A stretch of DNA of 63,983 nucleotides, the filler included, from Octopus bimaculoides (Eukaryota): assembly GCF_001194135.2 (NCBI RefSeq). It is 5 parts of 5 records of this genome, joined end to end, with 100 filler letters (N's around TTAATTAATTAA, not from the genome) between each part and the next. Parts side by side here need not be neighbours in the genome. Positions count along the whole stretch, not along the records: positions 55,887 to 62,848 come from NC_068992.1; 4 more parts are not named here. One strand, written 5' to 3'. The notes under the pieces were generated by a model that saw nothing but the letters and a program-made list of their open reading frames with translations, made no database searches and was not told the origin of the DNA. The number at the start of each line of letters is the position of its first letter. Positions within the stretch are counted from its first letter, which is position 1. A program made the position numbers and the translations under genes. This document shows positions 24,340 to 62,660 of the stretch, piece after piece.

Positions 24340-25413
24340 TATATATATATATATATATTACTATACTAACGTCTTAATCTTTTTGTTCCAGCTGTAATAA
24401 AATTCCATGCATACATCTACATGTATATATATGTATATACGTATGTATGTATGTATGTATGTATGTATGTATGTATGTATGTATGTATGTATGCATATAT
24501 GTTTCGGAAATCTAATGCACAAAAACGAACGGAAAAGAGGACACAACAGAAGATATATATGAATATATGTTTATATATATAAGTGCATCTGGTGTGTATG
24601 TACGTATACGTGCTTGCATTTCTGTATATCCGTCTGTCTGTTTGTCTGTCTGTATATATATGTATATATGTATATATGTACCCATATATTTATGTATGTA
24701 TGTACGTATGTATGTATGTATGTATGTATGTACGTATGTATGTACACATGTATACATATCTGTTTGCATCGAGATGGACTGCAAAGCTTATTTCTTAAGG
24801 GTGAATACCCACATGAAAACACACTTCATGACACTGTTTGAAAGATAAATCAGTTTTCTTGACTTAGGAATTTCCGTGATACAACCATCAGATATTTTTA
24901 AAAGAATGTGTTTAGTTAAATTTAGACAAAGTAAAAAGAATTCTATGATGCCCATTTCCAATCTTCACCATTATAGCTTTCGTTTTATTCTTTGTTTCAC
25001 AGTTGTAAGATTTAGGAAAACATTCCTTCGCGTTACTTGTTACAACCTGTTAGGAATTTTCAAATATATATATGTATATGCTTCGTTTAATTCTTTCCTT
25101 TACTTATTACACCTGATTTCTGAGAAGCAAAATTTCCAGATCAGGCAATAGAATTCCTGTCATGTTTCCGAAAATGCCATCCCTTTTCCGCTTCGAGAGG
25201 GCAGAAACATACGATATGAATAGTTTTAAATAATGAACGGTGAGTGGAAGACAGTTTCGTAAACTATGCACAAATGGATGAGACGCAGAGACGCAGATAT
25301 ATAGAAAGGCAGATAGATAGATATAGATACAAACATGCACATACATATATTCATATATATGCATGTATTTTTGCATATTTACTCACACCTACACAAAAAT
25401 GCATAAATATGTA

Positions 25414-55886: not shown

Positions 55887-56955
55887 ATTTGAACTCAGAA
55901 TGTGAAGACAGAGGAAATGTTGCTAAACACTTTATCAGGGTGCTAACAACTCTGACAGTTTGGCACATTATTATTATTATTATTATTAGTAGTAGTAGTA
56001 GTAGTAGTAATAGTAGTAGTAGTAGTAGTAGAACAAGGCTTGAAGTTTGGAGGGAAAGCTTTAGTTGATACCATGAACCTCAATTTTTTGCTGGTGTTTT
56101 ATTTTATTGATTCTAGAGTATAGGTTCTCAAAGTGGGTGCTACTGCTCCCCATTGGGCGTTGAAACGGTCCAGGTGGGCGCTGGTGCCTAAGGGAGTGGT
56201 GGGGGTCGGAGCAGTAGAGAAAAAAAGAGATGTTGGGAGGAAGACAGTGGATTGGGGGACACTATGAGTTTACCATAATTCATAGCATGACTGAAACAAG
56301 TAAAAGAGAGAGAGGGAGAGACAGAAACTAGAGAAGCCAGTATGTGTGCGTATGTTTGATTTTTCTTTGTCTTTATGTTTCTGTGTCTGCAAATAAAACA
56401 ACAACCTGACTCTCAAATACAAATATTCTCATGTGCTTACAGTCAACCACAAAAGCATGTCTGTGCGTCTTGATATTTCCCCGACATGTTATATTACCTT
56501 TGTAAACAAAAGAGACTCATAACTATGTCTGCGTTGTTTCTTTGTTCAATAGATAAGCGTATTATTATCTTCCTTGAAAACAGGTGAGGTTTGGTGACAG
56601 GAAAAGCATTCAGCTATAGAAAATCTGTCTCAATGAATTCCATCTGATCCATACAAGCATGGGAAAAAATGGATCTTAAAATGATGACATTGATATCAAT
56701 AATATATATTCTATTAATAGCAGGGTTCCATTGAAGCTTGTTGGCTGTTTTAATTATTTCTTTGCATGAATGGAGTTTGTTGAGTTTAGGAGCCTGTTTA
56801 TGATGTTAGGCTTTGATAAATTTATTGTGATTTTGGCAGAGACTGGTTTATAAGATTTGTTAAAATTTTGAATTTGATTTTGTCAATCATACTACTACAT
56901 ATTTTATATAGTGTCAGCTACGGTTTAAAATAGTGTTCTGTTTTTCTTTTTGTAG

Positions 56956-57109
56956 TGATATATCTGAGATTAATTTTGAGAAAATGTTGGCTTCCAAACT
57001 TGATGGTGAACACTTGAAGATAGAGAGAAAGCAAGCATCTCACAGCAGCATAAATTGGGTTTGGTACTGGAGAGCTAAGCCTGAAACTTGGATTGAAATG
57101 AGTAAATCG
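56956..57109 (+). CDS. Penultimate exon of a tandem-WWE protein (PARP12/ZC3HAV1/TIPARP-like)
   Basis: Acceptor TTTTTCTTTTTGTAG, 154-bp exon (S)DISEINFEKMLASKLDGEHLKIERKQASHSSINWVWYWRAKPETWIEMSKS, donor TCG|GTAAAT. I.F..M..R..W.WYW..W.E matches the WWE1-WWE2 junction. Confidence 0.75.
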
Positions 57110-58086
57110 GTAAATTATATTTTTATATTTAACAGAACTATGGTAGGTTAGAGGAATCAGTATAGCATCTAATATATTGTGGAATTTCTTAGTTTCTTTA
57201 TGTTTTAACTTCAGATTGTTTGTGGAAAGTACTGGTGGTATGAGCTTGATGTTGACGTAACTAATTGAAGGTGATGTTCAAGTATAGCCACAATGCAATT
57301 AGTAAATGGATAAGAGAATTTTATAATGTAATATCACTCTATTCCTCTTTCTTATCAATGTTTATTCTCTATAAACAAGTATTGACCAGATCCACAATTG
57401 TTTCTTGATGGTTCACATAATGTGTTCTTGTTAAATTCAGCATGTCCTCTATTTACTATTAATTTCTTCATCAGTTTTACATTCATATTTCTATTGGAAA
57501 CATCTGCAACTGCAACATTGCATCTTTGTATGTGCCTTGCATCTGTACCATGTCATCCATGAAGCTAAAAGTTTTCACCTGTGACTTACAAGACTTTGCC
57601 CCAAATTATTGACCTACCTGCCTCAATCATAATTGCTTTACAGCCTCTAAATTATGGCAAATTTTTCATTTGGCAGGTATCATCAATTTGTTTTACTGGT
57701 TTATGTAAACATTGTCATTTTTCATTCATGCATCTGCTAATGTGGTACTTGTCTACTTTCTTGTAAGTTAATGTTGCGTTTCCAGTAAATCACATACAAT
57801 ATGTCCTCACCTTGTCACTGCAGATCCCTGCATCCAGTGCTATATACTATCACACTTTTTAATCTTATAACATCTACTCTTCTTTCTTAGAAAGAAATTA
57901 GTTTATGTTGTCAACAAATATAGTAATTGATCAGCTCCCTAATCATCATTCAGCAGCTATCTCCCAAGCTGGCTTCTGTTCGTTGGTTTGAGAGGATCCA
58001 ACAGGTCTAAGGGTTGTGTCCTGTTCCAGTGTCTGCTGTGGCATGGCTTCTTTGGTTGGATGACCCTCCTAATACTATCCATTTCA

Positions 58087-58203
58087 ACAGGCTTCTTGAA
58101 GTATGATCAATAAACAAGTGTCACCTTAGTCTGCTGGCTGTGGGCAGCCGACACTTTCCATCATACGTAGCAAAATAAGCTGCGAGTTTTAATCAAATGA
58201 TAA
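58087..58203 (+). mobile_element. Solo 3' UTR of the R4/Dong-like family
   Basis: TTAGTCTGCTGG.TGTG..CAGC.GACACTTTCCATCATAC..AGCAAAATAAGCTG matches 5680-5763. Confidence 0.8.
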
Positions 58204-58416
58204 TGGTTTCAAATTTTGGCACTGGGCCAGCAATTTTGGAGGTGGTTGTTAAGTCAATTACATCAACCTCGGTGTTCAACTGATACTTATTTTATCAACT
58301 CTGAAAGGATGAAAGGCAAAGTTACCTCAGTGGAATTTGAACTCAGAACAAAGTCAGAAGAAATGCCTCTAAGCATTTTGCCCAGCATGCTAACAGTTCT
58401 GCCAACTTGCCACCTT
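58203..58416 (-). mobile_element. SINE family A (intronic, antisense to the WWE gene)
   Basis: Full head, core and CAAAATTTGAAACCA-type tail on the minus strand. Confidence 0.85.
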
Positions 58417-58485
58417 CCTGCACCAATATTCATTTTGTTTGCAGAAGATAAAGGAGTGGATTGCAATTTAAAAGAATTTTTCTAA

Positions 58486-58643
58486 TCGCAGAATAATGCT
58501 AATAATATAGCTTGAACAGGATAAACTACCCCTATTTTGCAGAGAAAGGTGGCTAGCTGTCCACAGTTAGCCACTTACACTTTTCTCTGCAAAATAGGGG
58601 TAGTTTATCCTGTTCAGGCTATATTATTAGCATTATTCTGCGA
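58486..58643 (+). repeat. 158-nt near-perfect hairpin in the last intron of the WWE gene
   Basis: 58486-58547 pairs with 58582-58643 (61/62 Watson-Crick, one U-G); 58549-58560 pairs with 58563-58574 (11/12, one G-U); 2-nt apex and a short asymmetric bulge. Confidence 0.93.
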
Positions 58644-58777
58644 CTGAGAATTAAAAATCACTTCTTTAACTTTCTAAAAAGATATCCCAACGCTTCTAAA
58701 AGCAAGCTTCGCTTGTTTATTTACGTTTGTCCTAATTTGAATTTAATTTTTCTAATATTTCTTCTCTATACTTTCAG

Positions 58778-58948
58778 GGAATTGAAGAAGAAAATAAAAT
58801 CATTGAAAAGTCCTTCAATTCAAAAACAAATCTGAAGCTACATTTTAAAGAATCAAATACCTATGCAGTACTGGATGTTAAAAAGATGGTATTGATTCAT
58901 AAATCTATTCCGTATCCAGTTTGCCGCCGTCCAGAAAAGAAAGATTAA
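58778..58948 (+). CDS. Terminal coding exon of the tandem-WWE protein
   Basis: Acceptor TTCTTCTCTATACTTTCAG, phase 0 matching the previous donor; GIEEENKIIEKSFNSKTNLKLHFKESNTYAVLDVKKMVLIHKSIPYPVCRRPEKKD*, with WWE-like IE..F..Y..LD...M..V.RRP. Confidence 0.75.
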   Translation, partial: GIEEENKIIEKSFNSKTNLKLHFKESNTYAVLDVKKMVLIHKSIPYPVCRRPEKKD

Positions 58949-59093: not shown

Positions 59094-59114
59094 AATAAAT
59101 TTAATTGGAATAAA
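59094..59114 (+). promoter_or_regulatory. Two AATAAA candidate polyadenylation signals for the WWE gene
   Basis: AATAAA at 59094-59099 and 59109-59114, about 150 nt after the stop. AT-rich context makes chance matches likely. Confidence 0.4.
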
Positions 59115-59208
59115 AGTGGAATATAATTAACATACATGTAAGTAGATTCAACGTTGTTTATTGTTGTGGAAGATGACATTCCGAAGTTGTTAATATTAAC
59201 ATAGCTAA

Positions 59209-59422
59209 AGGTGGCAAACCAACAGAATTGTTAACATGCTGGACAAAATGCTTAGTGACTTTTTAATCATCTTTACATTCTGAGTTCAAATGCTGCCAAG
59301 GTTGACTTTGCCTTTCTTCTTTTTGAGGTCGATGAAATAGTACCAGTTGCACACTGGGGTCAATGCAATTGACTTATGCCTCCCCCGAGCTTGCTGGCCT
59401 TGTGCCAAAAATCTGCAACCAA
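59209..59422 (+). mobile_element. SINE family A (inverted relative to 58203-58416)
   Basis: AGGTGGCAAAC..GTTCAAATGCTGCCAAGGTTGACTTTGCCTTTC..TTGCTGGCCTTGTGCCAAAA. Confidence 0.85.
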
Positions 59423-60038
59423 TTTTAACAGTGTGAAACTTGTGTGTAAATATACTGACGCAGTGAAGTGTGCAAAAGCCAGAGATCATGTGCAGGAGAA
59501 CAGGCCTCATTGATGTTTTGGCTTCTTAAATGTACTGTCCATTTCTGTTTGGCTGTGATTCTGTGATGTATGAACCTGTTGTGAATCTCACTGACCTGCT
59601 CAGAACACAGAATTTCAGCATAAACTACAGGTACTTAGAAAACTAAGCCATACACAGTTACTGAATCTAGTCAGATTGCACCAACATTTCAGTTATCCCT
59701 GTTACATTACTTAATGGATTCTCAAATCATCTGTGTACATGTTCAGTGCATCCTGGAATCCCATCCTGCAAAGACATTCACAAGTCTGATCTTGGTGACA
59801 ATGGAATGTAAATCCTTTCCATAATACACCAATAGTTGACATACCTTGAAAATCTTCCTTATCTGGGGACAATACTTGAAAAGCTTGCAAGATGGAAACA
59901 TATTCTGAGCTGCTGCGTACTTGTAGTGTACACTTGAGGGAAATTCCTCTCTCTCTGTTATATATACATAAATACAGACGTAGTAGATAACAGCTAGCTT
60001 TCGGCCGCCCTTTTGGACCCTGTTGTATCCACTACTCT

Positions 60039-60175
60039 GATTGGTTGGTATTGGCACAATTTGTCTCTTGCTCTATTGTGCGCCAAGATGCAACCCAACC
60101 AATCACAGCCTTCAAATAAGGTCACGTGAGACAGTCTCTTCTAAACCTCCGGTGAGCTGACCGCACCCTATAAAA
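60039..60175 (+). promoter_or_regulatory. Pol II promoter-like or LTR-like motif cluster
   Basis: Inverted CCAAT (GATTGG 60039-60044), AACCAATCACAG 60097-60108, E-box GTCACGTGAG 60121-60130, TATAAAA 60169-60175. Confidence 0.45.
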
Positions 60176-60429
60176 CTCTAGCTTCACATCGAGTTGATGT
60201 CTTTCGGTTCCAGACCTTTTAAAGTCTAGCCACTGACCATACAGGACACAGCCAGTTCCAGCGACGACACAACAGCAGCTACATGGAGACTCATCAACTT
60301 CGTCTAGCAGTATTCAGCAACCTCCACCTCTGTTGCCAGCATTCGTCCTAACATCAACATTATCTCTCTACGTACACAGCAACCAGCAGCACTAGCACAG
60401 GTTCCAACACAACACTGTTTGTGAATTAC

Positions 60430-61160
60430 TTCACTATGGTTAGCAGCAAATACAACCTGCGAGAACTCCTGTACTAAGTGACTGGCAGCAGCATCGTAGC
60501 CACGACTTCTTGCACGACATGTGTCTCAACTGGCTCCGCCAGGATGTGGGAGGGAGCAAAAGAGTCACGGACTGTAGTGTCACAGATGAGGCACCTACCA
60601 CTAACCCAGGGAGAGAGGGTAAGACCATCTATTCTCTTCCCATCACTTCTGGATAATCCTGTTGGCTCCAGAACTGAGTGGGTATTAATCCAAGTCAGGG
60701 CCTGCTTAATGATTAAGTTTAGCTCAGTGTGATGAGTGAAACAACCAGCATTTAGGTAGCAAGACAGATTCTGAAGACCTGTGGAGTCAAGGAGTCTACC
60801 ACAGCGACATCTCAGACCCCTACAGATGTCAGCTCCCACTCTGAGTGTGATGGAGAGGTGAAACTCATCTAGATTGAGTAGACCTCCAATGTTGGCCACA
60901 GGCAAGGCATCAATCCAGTTCCCCGAGAATTTTGCCCTAGCAGAACGTAGGTGATACCTTGAAAATTTACGAGATTGATAAAGGAGAGAGTTGAAAGTAG
61001 CACCTGAATGCAGATTGCTCCATACCTTCTGCTTTTGTTTGTCCTCAACTGTAACAGGAACTGGCAAACCCAGAACTCTCCACTGTAACATAGTATCATC
61101 CACCTCCCTATTAGAACTAGTCCATGTTGGAGAGGAGAGAATGTTGCCTACCAAAGGGGA
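60430..61160 (-). mobile_element. CRE-like REL non-LTR retrotransposon 3' fragment
   Basis: QKVW..LL..SGNWIDALP..G..L..LRVG..CRCG..DSTG..LSC..AG..H..LNLIIKQAL..LEPTGLSRSDGKRIDGLTLSPW..GRCL..D.TV.DSFA.S. Confidence 0.75.
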
Positions 61161-62327: not shown

Positions 62328-62660
62328 AATCATCATCATCATTTAATATGTGTTGTTCATGATAGCACGGGTTGGATGCTTTGAGCAGGGCTAGTAAACT
62401 GATTTGGCGTGGTTTTCTATGGCTGGATGCCCTTCCTAATACCAACCACTCCAAGAGTGTAATGGATGCTTTTACGTGCCACCAGCATGGGTGCCATTTG
62501 CACGACACCAGTATCTGCCATGACAACGGTTTCACTTAGCTTGATGGGTCTTCTTTTTCAAGCACAACAGGTTTCAGTCGTTTATTATTGCCTCCATGAG
62601 GCCCAGTGGTTGGAAGGTACTTTTTATGTGTCACTGGCACAGGTACTAGTTACGTGACAC
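62328..62660 (-). mobile_element. Family B repeat
   Basis: Plus strand reads CATCATCATTTAA..GGCTGGATGCCCTTCCTAATACCAACCACTCC..TTTTACGTGCCACC, the inverse of 54520-54702. Confidence 0.8.

What the first reader, a model, noticed from the sequence alone, without database searches (positions are those of the whole stretch)
58486..58643. Long intronic hairpin 134 nt upstream of the terminal-exon acceptor; both mismatches are G-U on the sense strand
It has a 62-bp outer stem and a 12-bp inner stem with a 2-nt apex and almost no spacer, unlike a typical MITE. On the WWE pre-mRNA both non-Watson-Crick positions (58512/58617 and 58556/58567) are G-U wobbles; on the other strand they would be A-C mismatches. 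Two events are weak statistics. It is a candidate ADAR substrate, hairpin-siRNA or miRNA source, or splice regulator in a putative antiviral gene, in a lineage known for heavy A-to-I editing and miRNA expansion.
Basis: partly seen in the sequence, partly recalled or inferred. Interest (0 to 1): 0.7.

Follow-up and report, generated by a model that had tools for sequence, protein, structure and literature searches.

The report
Young transposon insertion forming intronic hairpin
The long hairpin is real, but it is the fold-back half of a 258-bp mobile element that inserted into the last intron of an Octopus bimaculoides ZAP/PARP12-like antiviral gene after the split from O. sinensis, so it is an ordinary young repeat and not a conserved regulatory RNA.

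Summary
The hairpin at 58486-58643 is confirmed: 62-bp outer stem, 12-bp inner stem, -124.6 kcal/mol, z = -25. All three non-Watson-Crick pairs are G.U on the sense strand. The gene context is also confirmed. The piece is Octopus bimaculoides, and the hairpin lies in the last intron of a 416-aa ZAP/PARP12-like gene, 134 nt before the acceptor.

The hairpin is not a free-standing or conserved element. It is the 5' part of a 258-bp insertion (58487-58744: hairpin plus a 101-nt non-palindromic tail). A perfect 12-bp target-site duplication, AATTTTTCTAAT, flanks the insertion. The orthologous O. sinensis intron has the empty site with one copy of that 12-mer.

A second, ~68% identical copy lies 9.8 kb downstream in a Ccdc124 intron. 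It has the same hairpin-plus-tail layout and its own perfect 12-bp duplication. In both copies the ends of the insert are not inverted repeats. The 3' ends agree and the 5' ends differ, which fits a retroposon-like repeat better than a classic MITE.

The G.U bias is three events (P about 0.125) and is absent in the second copy.

ADAR hyper-editing of the stem remains plausible but generic. A miRNA, siRNA or conserved splice-regulator role is not supported.

The parts
58475..58486 (+). Left copy of the 12-bp target-site duplication AATTTTTCTAAT. T58486 is host sequence that happens to pair with A58643.
   Evidence: Exact 12/12 direct repeat with 58745-58756. O. sinensis has a single copy, AATTTTTGTAAT, at the empty site.
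58487..58744 (+). Inserted 258-bp repeat element (copy 1): fold-back hairpin plus non-palindromic 3' tail. It is specific to the O. bimaculoides lineage.
   Evidence: Absent between L003 23021 and 23022 in the collinear O. sinensis ortholog. Paralogous copy at L002 24862-25124.
58486..58643 (+).
58644..58744 (+). 101-nt tail of the element. It is not self-complementary with the left end. Its 3' end ...TAATTTGAATTT is shared with copy 2.
   Evidence: Alignment of copy 1 and copy 2; comparison of the ends.
58745..58756 (+). Right copy of the target-site duplication. It contains a branch-point-like TTCTAAT, with A58755 lying 22 nt before the acceptor G.
   Evidence: Sequence. Match to the YNYURAY branch-site consensus is by inspection. 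Its use as the branch point is inferred.
58757..58777 (+). Polypyrimidine tract and 3' splice site (AG at 58776-58777) of the last intron (57110-58777).
   Evidence: The spliced translation of 56956-57109 plus 58778-58948 is 100% identical to residues 310-416 of P0007. The region is 97% conserved with O. sinensis.
58778..58948 (+). Terminal coding exon (C-terminal half of the WWE domain; stop codon TAA at 58946-58948).
   Evidence: The gene end L002 15550 corresponds to window 58948.
56956..57109 (+). Penultimate coding exon (N-terminal half of the WWE domain).

Best explanation
The hairpin is the self-complementary 5' portion of a short non-autonomous interspersed repeat of about 260 bp: a fold-back of roughly 75-100-nt arms followed by a ~100-nt tail. 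The repeat inserted into the last intron of the O. bimaculoides ZAP/PARP12-like gene after the divergence from the O. sinensis lineage. Integration duplicated 12 bp of target DNA. That target happened to be the branch-site region, 21-33 nt before the acceptor. The downstream copy of the duplication therefore restores a branch-point-like TTCTAAT and the polypyrimidine tract at the normal distance from the acceptor. This is probably why the insertion is tolerated (inferred). The element most likely moved through an RNA copy by target-primed reverse transcription in the + orientation. The two copies share the 3' end and differ at the 5' end, their termini are not inverted repeats, and both targets are AT-rich (inferred; about 55% within the transposon reading). 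On the pre-mRNA the element will fold into a ~74-bp near-perfect duplex. That duplex is expected to be hyper-edited by ADAR like other young repeats. This is a by-product and not a selected function.
For: Shown. (1) Species and gene: the window is O. bimaculoides CM046612.1, and the annotated protein P0007 ends in exactly the two exons of this piece. (2) Empty site: the collinear O. sinensis ortholog reads ...AAAGAATTTTTGTAAT|ATTTCTTCTCTATACTTTCAG. O. bimaculoides has 258 bp between two perfect copies of AATTTTTCTAAT. (3) Second copy: L002 24862-25124 (263 bp) is ~68% identical over both hairpin and tail. It also folds into a long hairpin (-85.5 kcal/mol, z = -17.6) and is flanked by its own perfect 12-bp repeat AGAGATTTTAAA. 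(4) Ends: the 3' ends match (..TAATTTGAATTT and ..TAATTTGAAATTTC). Copy 1 lacks about 32 nt of the left arm that copy 2 has. Left and right termini are not inverted repeats. (5) Age: neighbouring SINE copies are orthologous in both species at 90-93% identity, whereas the hairpin arms are ~96-97% alike. This fits an insertion younger than the species split. Background: young repeats are the main A-to-I targets across metazoans including O. bimaculoides (PMC9989829). Most octopus editing lies in introns and 3'UTRs and rarely alters splice sites (PMC9699675).
Against: Only two copies could be examined (25.5 kb of O. bimaculoides DNA), so the family's copy number, consensus and class are not established. 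No copy was seen in 53 kb of O. vulgaris and O. sinensis DNA. The identical 12-bp duplication length in both copies is more typical of a transposase than of LINE-type endonucleases, which usually give variable lengths. No pol III A/B boxes, tRNA-like head, poly(A) tail or simple-repeat tail were found, so it is not a textbook SINE. Editing, small RNAs and splicing could not be tested here. Host exaptation of a young insertion cannot be excluded by sequence alone.
Confidence: 0.85

Rival explanations
1. It is a cut-and-paste DNA transposon derivative, a fold-back or MITE-like element. Its transposase makes a fixed 12-bp staggered cut. The long palindrome is a pair of very long inverted repeats needed for transposition, and the tail is internal or subterminal sequence.
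For: Both copies have duplications of exactly 12 bp. The palindromic symmetry is kept in two copies that are only ~68% identical, with 7 fully compensatory pair changes among 55 alignable stem pairs. That is what co-evolving inverted repeats would show.
Against: The termini defined by the duplications are not inverted repeats of each other in either copy. The left ends differ by ~32 nt while the right ends coincide, yet both are directly abutted by intact duplications. That would not be expected for post-insertion truncation of a DNA element. From my own knowledge, no classical eukaryotic DNA-transposon superfamily gives a 12-bp duplication; Mutator/Foldback gives 9-11 bp.
Confidence: 0.15
2. 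The source element is not palindromic. The left arm is made anew at each integration, when the first-strand cDNA snaps back and copies itself before joining the upstream target end.
For: The inverted segment starts at the centre and extends outward for a different length in each copy: about 76 nt in copy 1 and about 100 nt in copy 2. In the young copy the palindrome runs almost to the apex with no spacer. Arms match within a copy while differing between copies. Snap-back 5' junctions carrying reverse-complemented cDNA sequence are documented for R2 TPRT (PMC11331408). Penelope-like elements often carry an adjacent inverted partial copy (PMC8557442).
Against: Snap-back junctions are a low-frequency outcome in the R2 system, yet both copies here are palindromic. 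A master copy that is itself palindromic, combined with 5' truncation, explains the same data. In Penelope-like elements the inverted copy is 5'-truncated and keeps its 3' end, which is the opposite of what is seen here. No hammerhead ribozyme or PLE protein remnant was found next to the element.
Confidence: 0.15
3. The hairpin has been recruited by the host. It could act as a selected ADAR-editing or dsRNA element, or as a structural splice regulator of the antiviral gene, for example by masking the acceptor-like CCCCTATTTTGCAG|A that lies in its own left arm. It could also be a young miRNA or small-RNA source.
For: All three non-canonical pairs are G.U on the sense strand. The sense RNA folds 10.6 kcal/mol better than the antisense RNA. 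The position is close to the 3' splice site of an immune gene. The stem sequesters an acceptor-like motif.
Against: The element is absent from O. sinensis. It is a member of a repeat family. Three transitions give P about 0.125, and known transcription-coupled mutation asymmetry would also produce G.U on the sense strand. The paralog, which is also sense-oriented in an intron, shows 1 G.U against 2 A.C. A 74-bp near-perfect stem is unlike an animal pre-miRNA, and Rfam hits are far below threshold: mir-14 scores 24.8 bits against a cut-off of 53. There is no match in the held supplements of the octopus miRNA study. Molluscs appear to have no dedicated endo-siRNA pathway.
Confidence: 0.05
4. It is an assembly artefact: a chimeric palindromic read or a mis-join.
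For: Near-perfect palindromes with almost no spacer are a known artefact class in some sequencing chemistries.
Against: The arms differ at three positions and by a 6-nt indel. The unit is bounded by a clean 12-bp duplication around a site that is empty in the sister species. An independent, diverged copy has the same architecture.
Confidence: 0.01

Closest known systems
Palindromic MITEs that fold into hairpins inside genes, e.g. human MADE1, the source of the mir-548 family (PMC1784062, seen)
   Same: A short, non-coding, multi-copy mobile element whose transcript folds into a near-perfect hairpin when carried in an intron. It is a possible raw material for small RNAs.
   Different: MADE1 is 80 bp, is bounded by its inverted repeats and has a TA duplication (the size and duplication are from my own knowledge). 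Here the inverted repeat occupies only the 5' ~60% of the unit, the termini are not inverted repeats, and the duplication is 12 bp. The stem (74 bp) is far longer than a pre-miRNA.
Non-autonomous retroposons (SINE-like elements) inserted by LINE-type target-primed reverse transcription
   Same: Target-site duplication in the 7-20-bp range, AT-rich target, conserved 3' end with a variable 5' end, about 260 bp, no coding capacity.
   Different: No tRNA, 7SL or 5S-derived head, no A/B boxes, and no poly(A) or microsatellite tail were detected. The body is a long fold-back, which is unusual for SINEs.
Inverted partial copies at the 5' end of Penelope-like element insertions (PMC8557442) and snap-back 5' junctions in R2 TPRT (PMC11331408)
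   Same: Retroelement integration that leaves an adjacent inverted duplicate, so the insertion forms an inverted repeat.
   Different: The PLE inverted copy keeps its 3' end and is 5'-truncated. Here the inverted segment starts at the centre and lacks the 3' tail. No PLE reverse transcriptase, GIY-YIG endonuclease or hammerhead motif was found nearby.
Inverted Alu pairs and other young repeat-derived intronic dsRNAs edited by ADAR
   Same: Repeat-derived long dsRNA in pre-mRNA. Promiscuous A-to-I hyper-editing is expected (PMC9989829).
   Different: Here a single element folds on itself; the duplex does not come from two neighbouring inverted copies. The window also holds a conventional inverted SINE pair around the terminal exon (58203-58417 and 59207-59445).
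Drosophila hairpin-RNA (hpRNA) endo-siRNA loci
   Same: A long, near-perfect transcribed hairpin.
   Different: hpRNA loci need a Dicer-2/AGO2-type pathway. siDicer, siAgo and endo-siRNAs were not detected in molluscs, including O. bimaculoides (PMC12479628).

Membership tests
MITE (miniature inverted-repeat transposable element) | Terminal inverted repeats at the two ends of the inserted unit | tested here: not met
   The unit delimited by the duplications begins CGCAGAATAATG... and ends ...CCTAATTTGAATTT. Copy 2 begins GATACAGGTAACG... and ends ...AATTTGAAATTTC. In neither copy are the ends reverse complements. The inverted repeat is internal and 5'-sided.
MITE (miniature inverted-repeat transposable element) | Target-site duplication of the length typical of a DNA-transposon superfamily (2-11 bp) | tested here: not met
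   Both copies have 12-bp duplications. From my own knowledge this matches no classical superfamily.
MITE (miniature inverted-repeat transposable element) | Small, non-coding, multi-copy and dispersed | tested here: inconclusive
   The units are 258 and 263 bp, and the hairpin has stop codons in all three + strand frames by inspection of the sequence. Two copies lie 9.8 kb apart in 25.5 kb of O. bimaculoides DNA. The genome-wide count could not be obtained.
SINE / non-autonomous TPRT retroposon | Flanking target-site duplication, with an empty orthologous or paralogous site | tested here: met
   Perfect 12-bp duplications in both copies. The site is empty in O. sinensis.
SINE / non-autonomous TPRT retroposon | Conserved 3' end with variable (truncated) 5' ends | tested here: met
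   The 3' ends align. Copy 1 lacks ~32 nt present at the 5' end of copy 2. This rests on only two copies.
SINE / non-autonomous TPRT retroposon | Pol III head (tRNA, 7SL or 5S-derived, with A/B boxes) | tested here: not met
   No tRNA by ARAGORN. No Rfam tRNA, 7SL or 5S hit at E<=1. No B box, and only one 2-mismatch A-box-like site on the minus strand.
SINE / non-autonomous TPRT retroposon | 3' tail shared with an autonomous LINE partner, or an A-rich or simple-repeat tail | not testable with these tools
   No octopus genome or repeat library can be searched at the DNA level here. No related sequence was found in the ~110 kb of loci held.
Animal miRNA gene | Imperfect hairpin of about 60 nt matching a known family, or supported by small-RNA reads | tested here: not met
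   The stem is 74 bp and nearly perfect. The best Rfam hits, mir-14 and mir-4878, score 24.8 bits against gathering scores of 53 and 100. No arm 12-16-mer occurs in the held supplements of PMC9699675. Small-RNA reads are not testable here.
Animal miRNA gene | Conservation at the orthologous locus | tested here: not met
   Absent from O. sinensis.
ADAR substrate (hyper-edited dsRNA) | Long duplex on a transcribed strand | tested here: met
   A 62 + 12 bp duplex lies on the sense strand of an annotated intron.
ADAR substrate (hyper-edited dsRNA) | Clustered A-to-G RNA-DNA differences | not testable with these tools
   No RNA-seq data are accessible here.
hpRNA / endo-siRNA locus | A host siRNA pathway (siDicer and siAgo) and 21-nt phased reads | not testable with these tools
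   Literature only: molluscs including O. bimaculoides lack siDicer and siAgo and detectable endo-siRNAs (PMC12479628).
Penelope-like element insertion | Adjacent inverted 5'-truncated copy, pLTR, hammerhead ribozyme, RT/GIY-YIG remnants | tested here: not met
   The inverted segment lacks the 3' end instead of the 5' end. No hammerhead hit in Rfam. The nearby 226-aa ORF has no Pfam domain.

The most novel reading that the evidence does not exclude
The element belongs to an undescribed octopus retroposon family whose integration builds a fold-back at the 5' end of each new copy, by snap-back of the first-strand cDNA. Every insertion into a transcribed intron would then create a near-perfect long dsRNA hairpin. 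Such a family would be a steady, transposon-driven supply of ADAR substrates in a lineage known for heavy RNA editing.
Probability: 0.12. Interest if true: 0.55.

Novelty: new member of a known kind. Interest (0 to 1): 0.25.

Why it matters
The work removes a tempting false lead. The hairpin is not a conserved regulatory RNA of an antiviral gene; it is a lineage-specific repeat insertion. Three smaller points remain of interest. (1) The insertion landed in the branch-site region, and its own 12-bp target duplication rebuilt the branch-point-like motif and pyrimidine tract. This illustrates how introns can tolerate insertions next to a splice site. (2) The repeat has an unusual layout: a 5' fold-back plus a tail, 12-bp duplications and no terminal inverted repeats. 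It deserves a proper genome-wide classification. (3) The insertion provides a natural presence/absence pair, O. bimaculoides against O. sinensis. That pair could be used to ask whether a 74-bp intronic duplex changes editing, splicing or expression of a ZAP-like gene.

Tried and rejected
(1) I looked for target-site duplications directly at the hairpin boundaries with symmetric offsets. None were found, because the real unit includes the 101-nt tail; the duplication only became visible from the O. sinensis comparison.

(2) A word-indexed protein search with the 107-aa spliced exon product found nothing. The exhaustive HMMER search found the exact protein, and re-querying with the full-length protein gave the species and the ortholog.

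(3) An exact look-up of the 226-aa retroelement ORF found nothing on record.

(4) Exact-pattern scans of metagenome contigs and viral contigs for arm sequences gave 0 hits. These collections probably hold no octopus DNA, so the result says nothing about copy number.

(5) Rfam gave only sub-threshold miRNA-shaped hits.

(6) Two ENA contigs fetched through a distant retroelement homolog (L004, L005) share no repeats with the window and were of no use. The Logan contigs L006 and L007 are intron-less transcripts of a related gene.

(7) The local SINE family, tested as the source of the hairpin or tail, gave alignment scores within the shuffle range.

(8) I considered an introner reading, in which the element creates the intron. 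I rejected it because the intron exists without the element in O. sinensis.

(9) I considered a Helitron. I rejected it because a 12-bp duplication is present.

Full report
**Observation**

The inverted repeat is real and sits at the stated place. The repeat finder reports arms 58486-58551 and 58578-58643, 66 nt and 97% complementary. As RNA the + strand of 58486-58643 folds at -124.6 kcal/mol. The fold has these parts:
- a 62-bp outer stem (58486-58547 / 58582-58643);
- a 6-nt bulge on the 3' side (58576-58581);
- a 12-bp inner stem (58548-58559 / 58564-58575);
- a 4-nt loop.

With flanks the z-score against dinucleotide shuffles is -25, and 0 of 200 shuffles fold as well. The stems hold three non-Watson-Crick pairs: 58512.58617, 58556.58567 and 58548.58575. 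All three are G.U on the + strand. The - strand folds at -114.0 kcal/mol. The hairpin ends 134 nt before the acceptor AG at 58776-58777.

**Gene context**

Joining 56956-57109 to 58778-58948 gives a 107-aa peptide with a WWE domain that spans the junction (Pfam E = 5.7e-6). An exhaustive HMMER search found a 416-aa protein whose residues 310-416 are 100% identical to this peptide. That protein is annotated 'zinc finger CCCH-type antiviral protein 1 [Octopus bimaculoides]', and it carries the PARP12-type CCCH and WWE Pfam domains. Its gene lies on CM046612.1 of GCA_001194135.2 and ends exactly at window 58948 (window coordinate = L002 coordinate + 43398). The intron is 57110-58777.

**What the hairpin belongs to**

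The O. sinensis ortholog (P0012, 72% identical, 'PARP12 isoform X1') was fetched with its introns as L003. The two loci are collinear across exons, introns and downstream sequence at 87-95% identity. At the hairpin the alignment breaks cleanly:
- window 58430-58486 matches L003 22965-23021 at 94.7%;
- window 58745-58780 matches L003 23010-23045 at 97.2%.

The two matches overlap by 12 nt in O. sinensis. The pairwise alignment shows O. sinensis ...AAAGAATTTTTGTAAT|ATTTCTTCTCTATACTTTCAG|GG. O. bimaculoides has 258 extra bases (58487-58744) sitting between two perfect copies of AATTTTTCTAAT, at 58475-58486 and 58745-58756.

This is the signature of a mobile-element insertion with a 12-bp target-site duplication and an empty site in the sister lineage. 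The inserted unit is the hairpin (58487-58642, closed by chance by T58486 and A58643) plus a 101-nt tail (58644-58744) that has no complement on the left.

**A second copy**

The 25.5-kb O. bimaculoides locus holds a second copy 9.8 kb downstream, in an intron of the neighbouring Ccdc124 gene. It aligns to copy 1 at about 68% identity across both hairpin and tail, up to the same 3' end. It folds into a long hairpin of its own (-85.5 kcal/mol, z = -17.6). It is flanked by its own perfect 12-bp direct repeat AGAGATTTTAAA, at L002 24850-24861 and 25125-25136, which delimits a 263-bp unit. The unit starts four bases after the donor hexamer GTATGT. Its arms are about 96-100 nt, with 87 Watson-Crick pairs, 9 mismatches and 4 indel positions.

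Comparing the two copies over the outer stem of copy 1:

| Outcome at the stem pair | Pairs |
|---|---|
| Unchanged | 42 |
| Changed on both sides, still Watson-Crick | 7 |
| Changed on both sides, now mismatched | 3 |
| Changed on one side | 3 |
| Fall in a gap | 7 |

The fold-back is therefore a property of the family and not an accident of this locus. No copy was found in 20 kb of O. vulgaris (L001) or 33 kb of O. sinensis (L003).

**Class of element**

It is not a classic MITE. In both copies the ends defined by the duplications are not inverted repeats of each other, and from my own knowledge 12 bp matches no classical DNA-transposon superfamily. Several features favour a non-autonomous retroposon inserted by target-primed reverse transcription in the + orientation:
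- The 3' ends coincide (..TAATTTGAATTT and ..TAATTTGAAATTTC).
- The 5' ends differ by about 32 nt of left arm, yet both are abutted by intact duplications.
- Both targets are AT-rich.
- In copy 1 the element's 3' AATTT overlaps the start of the duplication (AATTTTT), as expected if the nicked target primed on the RNA 3' end. This last point is inference.

Against a textbook SINE, there is no tRNA-like head, no A/B boxes and no A-rich or microsatellite tail. The identical duplication length in the two copies would also suit a transposase. I put the retroposon reading at roughly 55% and a DNA fold-back element at roughly 15%.

A further variant is that the left arm is made at integration by snap-back of the cDNA. 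Snap-back 5' junctions are documented for R2 (PMC11331408), and inverted partial copies are common in Penelope-like elements (PMC8557442). This variant would explain three things: the palindrome runs to an almost spacer-less apex, the arms match within copies but differ between them, and the left arm has a variable length. However, two of two copies being palindromic is explained as well or better by a palindromic master copy with 5' truncation.

**Consequences for the host (inferred)**

The target was the branch-site region. The downstream copy of the duplication puts a YNYURAY-type TTCTAAT (A58755) 22 nt before the acceptor, followed by the original pyrimidine tract. The 3' splice-site context is therefore rebuilt, which probably explains why the insertion is tolerated. 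The annotated protein uses the normal junction.

On the pre-mRNA the unit will form a ~74-bp duplex. Young repeats are the primary A-to-I targets in metazoans, including O. bimaculoides (PMC9989829). Most octopus editing is intronic or in 3'UTRs and rarely touches splice sites (PMC9699675). ADAR hyper-editing is therefore likely, but it is generic.

A hairpin-siRNA role is unlikely, because siDicer, siAgo and endo-siRNAs were not found in molluscs, including this species (PMC12479628). A miRNA role is unlikely for four reasons:
- the stem is too long and too perfect;
- Rfam hits are far below threshold;
- the held supplements of the octopus miRNA study contain none of the arm strings;
- the locus is absent from O. 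sinensis.

**The G.U asymmetry**

Three of three transitions giving G.U on the sense strand has P about 0.125 under a 50:50 null. From my own knowledge of transcription-associated mutation bias, the two commonest changes on the non-template strand are A-to-G and C-to-T, and both turn Watson-Crick pairs into G.U on the sense RNA without any selection. The paralogous copy is also sense-oriented in an intron, and it shows 1 G.U and 2 A.C among its transitions, plus 6 transversions. There is no evidence of selection for sense-strand folding.

**Age**

Neutral-looking orthologous blocks in this region are 87-93% identical between the two species. Among them are the two SINE copies that flank the hairpin and the terminal exon in inverted orientation. 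The hairpin arms differ at 3 of 74 pairs plus one 6-nt indel. Together with the empty site, this fits an insertion younger than the species split.

**Limits**

No octopus genome could be searched at the DNA level, so the copy number, the consensus and the autonomous partner are unknown. The metagenome and viral scans are uninformative. Editing, small RNAs, branch-point use and polymorphism are untested.

**Verdict**

The interpretation as a special regulatory hairpin is not supported. It is a young, lineage-specific insertion of a fold-back-bearing interspersed repeat, with generic potential as an ADAR substrate.

Noticed in passing
window 58203-58417 and 59207-59445: Two copies of a SINE-like repeat lie in inverted orientation and bracket the hairpin and the terminal coding exon. 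They are about 75-80% complementary over ~200 nt (I2, I5, I6). A partial third copy lies at 55887-55965. Both flanking copies are orthologous in O. sinensis at 93.5% and 90.4%, so this is an older and more conventional candidate dsRNA than the hairpin. The downstream copy lies beyond the AATAAA signals at 59094-59099 and 59109-59114, so it may be outside the mature mRNA.
   Followed up: partly
L002 24841-25136 (O. bimaculoides, 9.8 kb downstream of the gene; outside the piece): The second copy of the element starts 4 nt after a 5' splice-site hexamer (CAG|GTATGT) of a Ccdc124 exon, and copy 1 sits 21-33 nt before a 3' splice site. Both known copies are thus within about 35 nt of a splice site. 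This could be chance or an AT/T-rich target preference.
   Followed up: no
window 58527-58541 (also L002 ~24932-24946): The left arm carries a strong acceptor-like motif, CTACCCCTATTTTGCAG|AG. Its core ATTTTGCAGA is conserved in copy 2. In the folded RNA it is buried in the stem. If it were used, the exon would be extended by 237 nt of intron.
   Followed up: no
window 60474-61154 (- strand): A 226-aa ORF without Pfam domains. It is 55% identical to an O. vulgaris 'hypothetical predicted protein' and 65% identical to a Logan contig product. The DNA is ~78% identical to O. vulgaris L001 10100-10611. It looks like a fragment of a dispersed retroelement-type repeat.
   Followed up: partly
window 60035-60180: Two inverted CCAAT/ATTGG boxes (CTCTGATTGGTTGG ... 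CCAACCAATCACAG, I21) are followed about 60 nt later by CCCTATAAAA. The arrangement looks like a promoter. It may belong to the neighbouring repeat and not to a host gene.
   Followed up: no
window 62328-62570 and 58048-58090: Another interspersed repeat, with several copies in the O. vulgaris and O. sinensis loci at 78-92% identity and a partial copy inside the same intron (D2).
   Followed up: no
L003 22578-22964 (O. sinensis): O. sinensis has about 387 bp between the shared SINE and the hairpin's left flank, where O. bimaculoides has 12 bp (58418-58429). This is either a separate lineage-specific insertion in O. sinensis or a deletion in O. bimaculoides.
   Followed up: no
window 55969-56031: A compound microsatellite, (TAT)n(TAG)n, lies directly after the partial SINE-like copy at the edge of the piece (D1, D5).
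   Followed up: no
tool behaviour: The word-indexed protein search missed a 100% identical protein when queried with its last 107 residues, but found it with the full-length query. Negative results from that tool with short queries should not be read as absence.
   Followed up: yes
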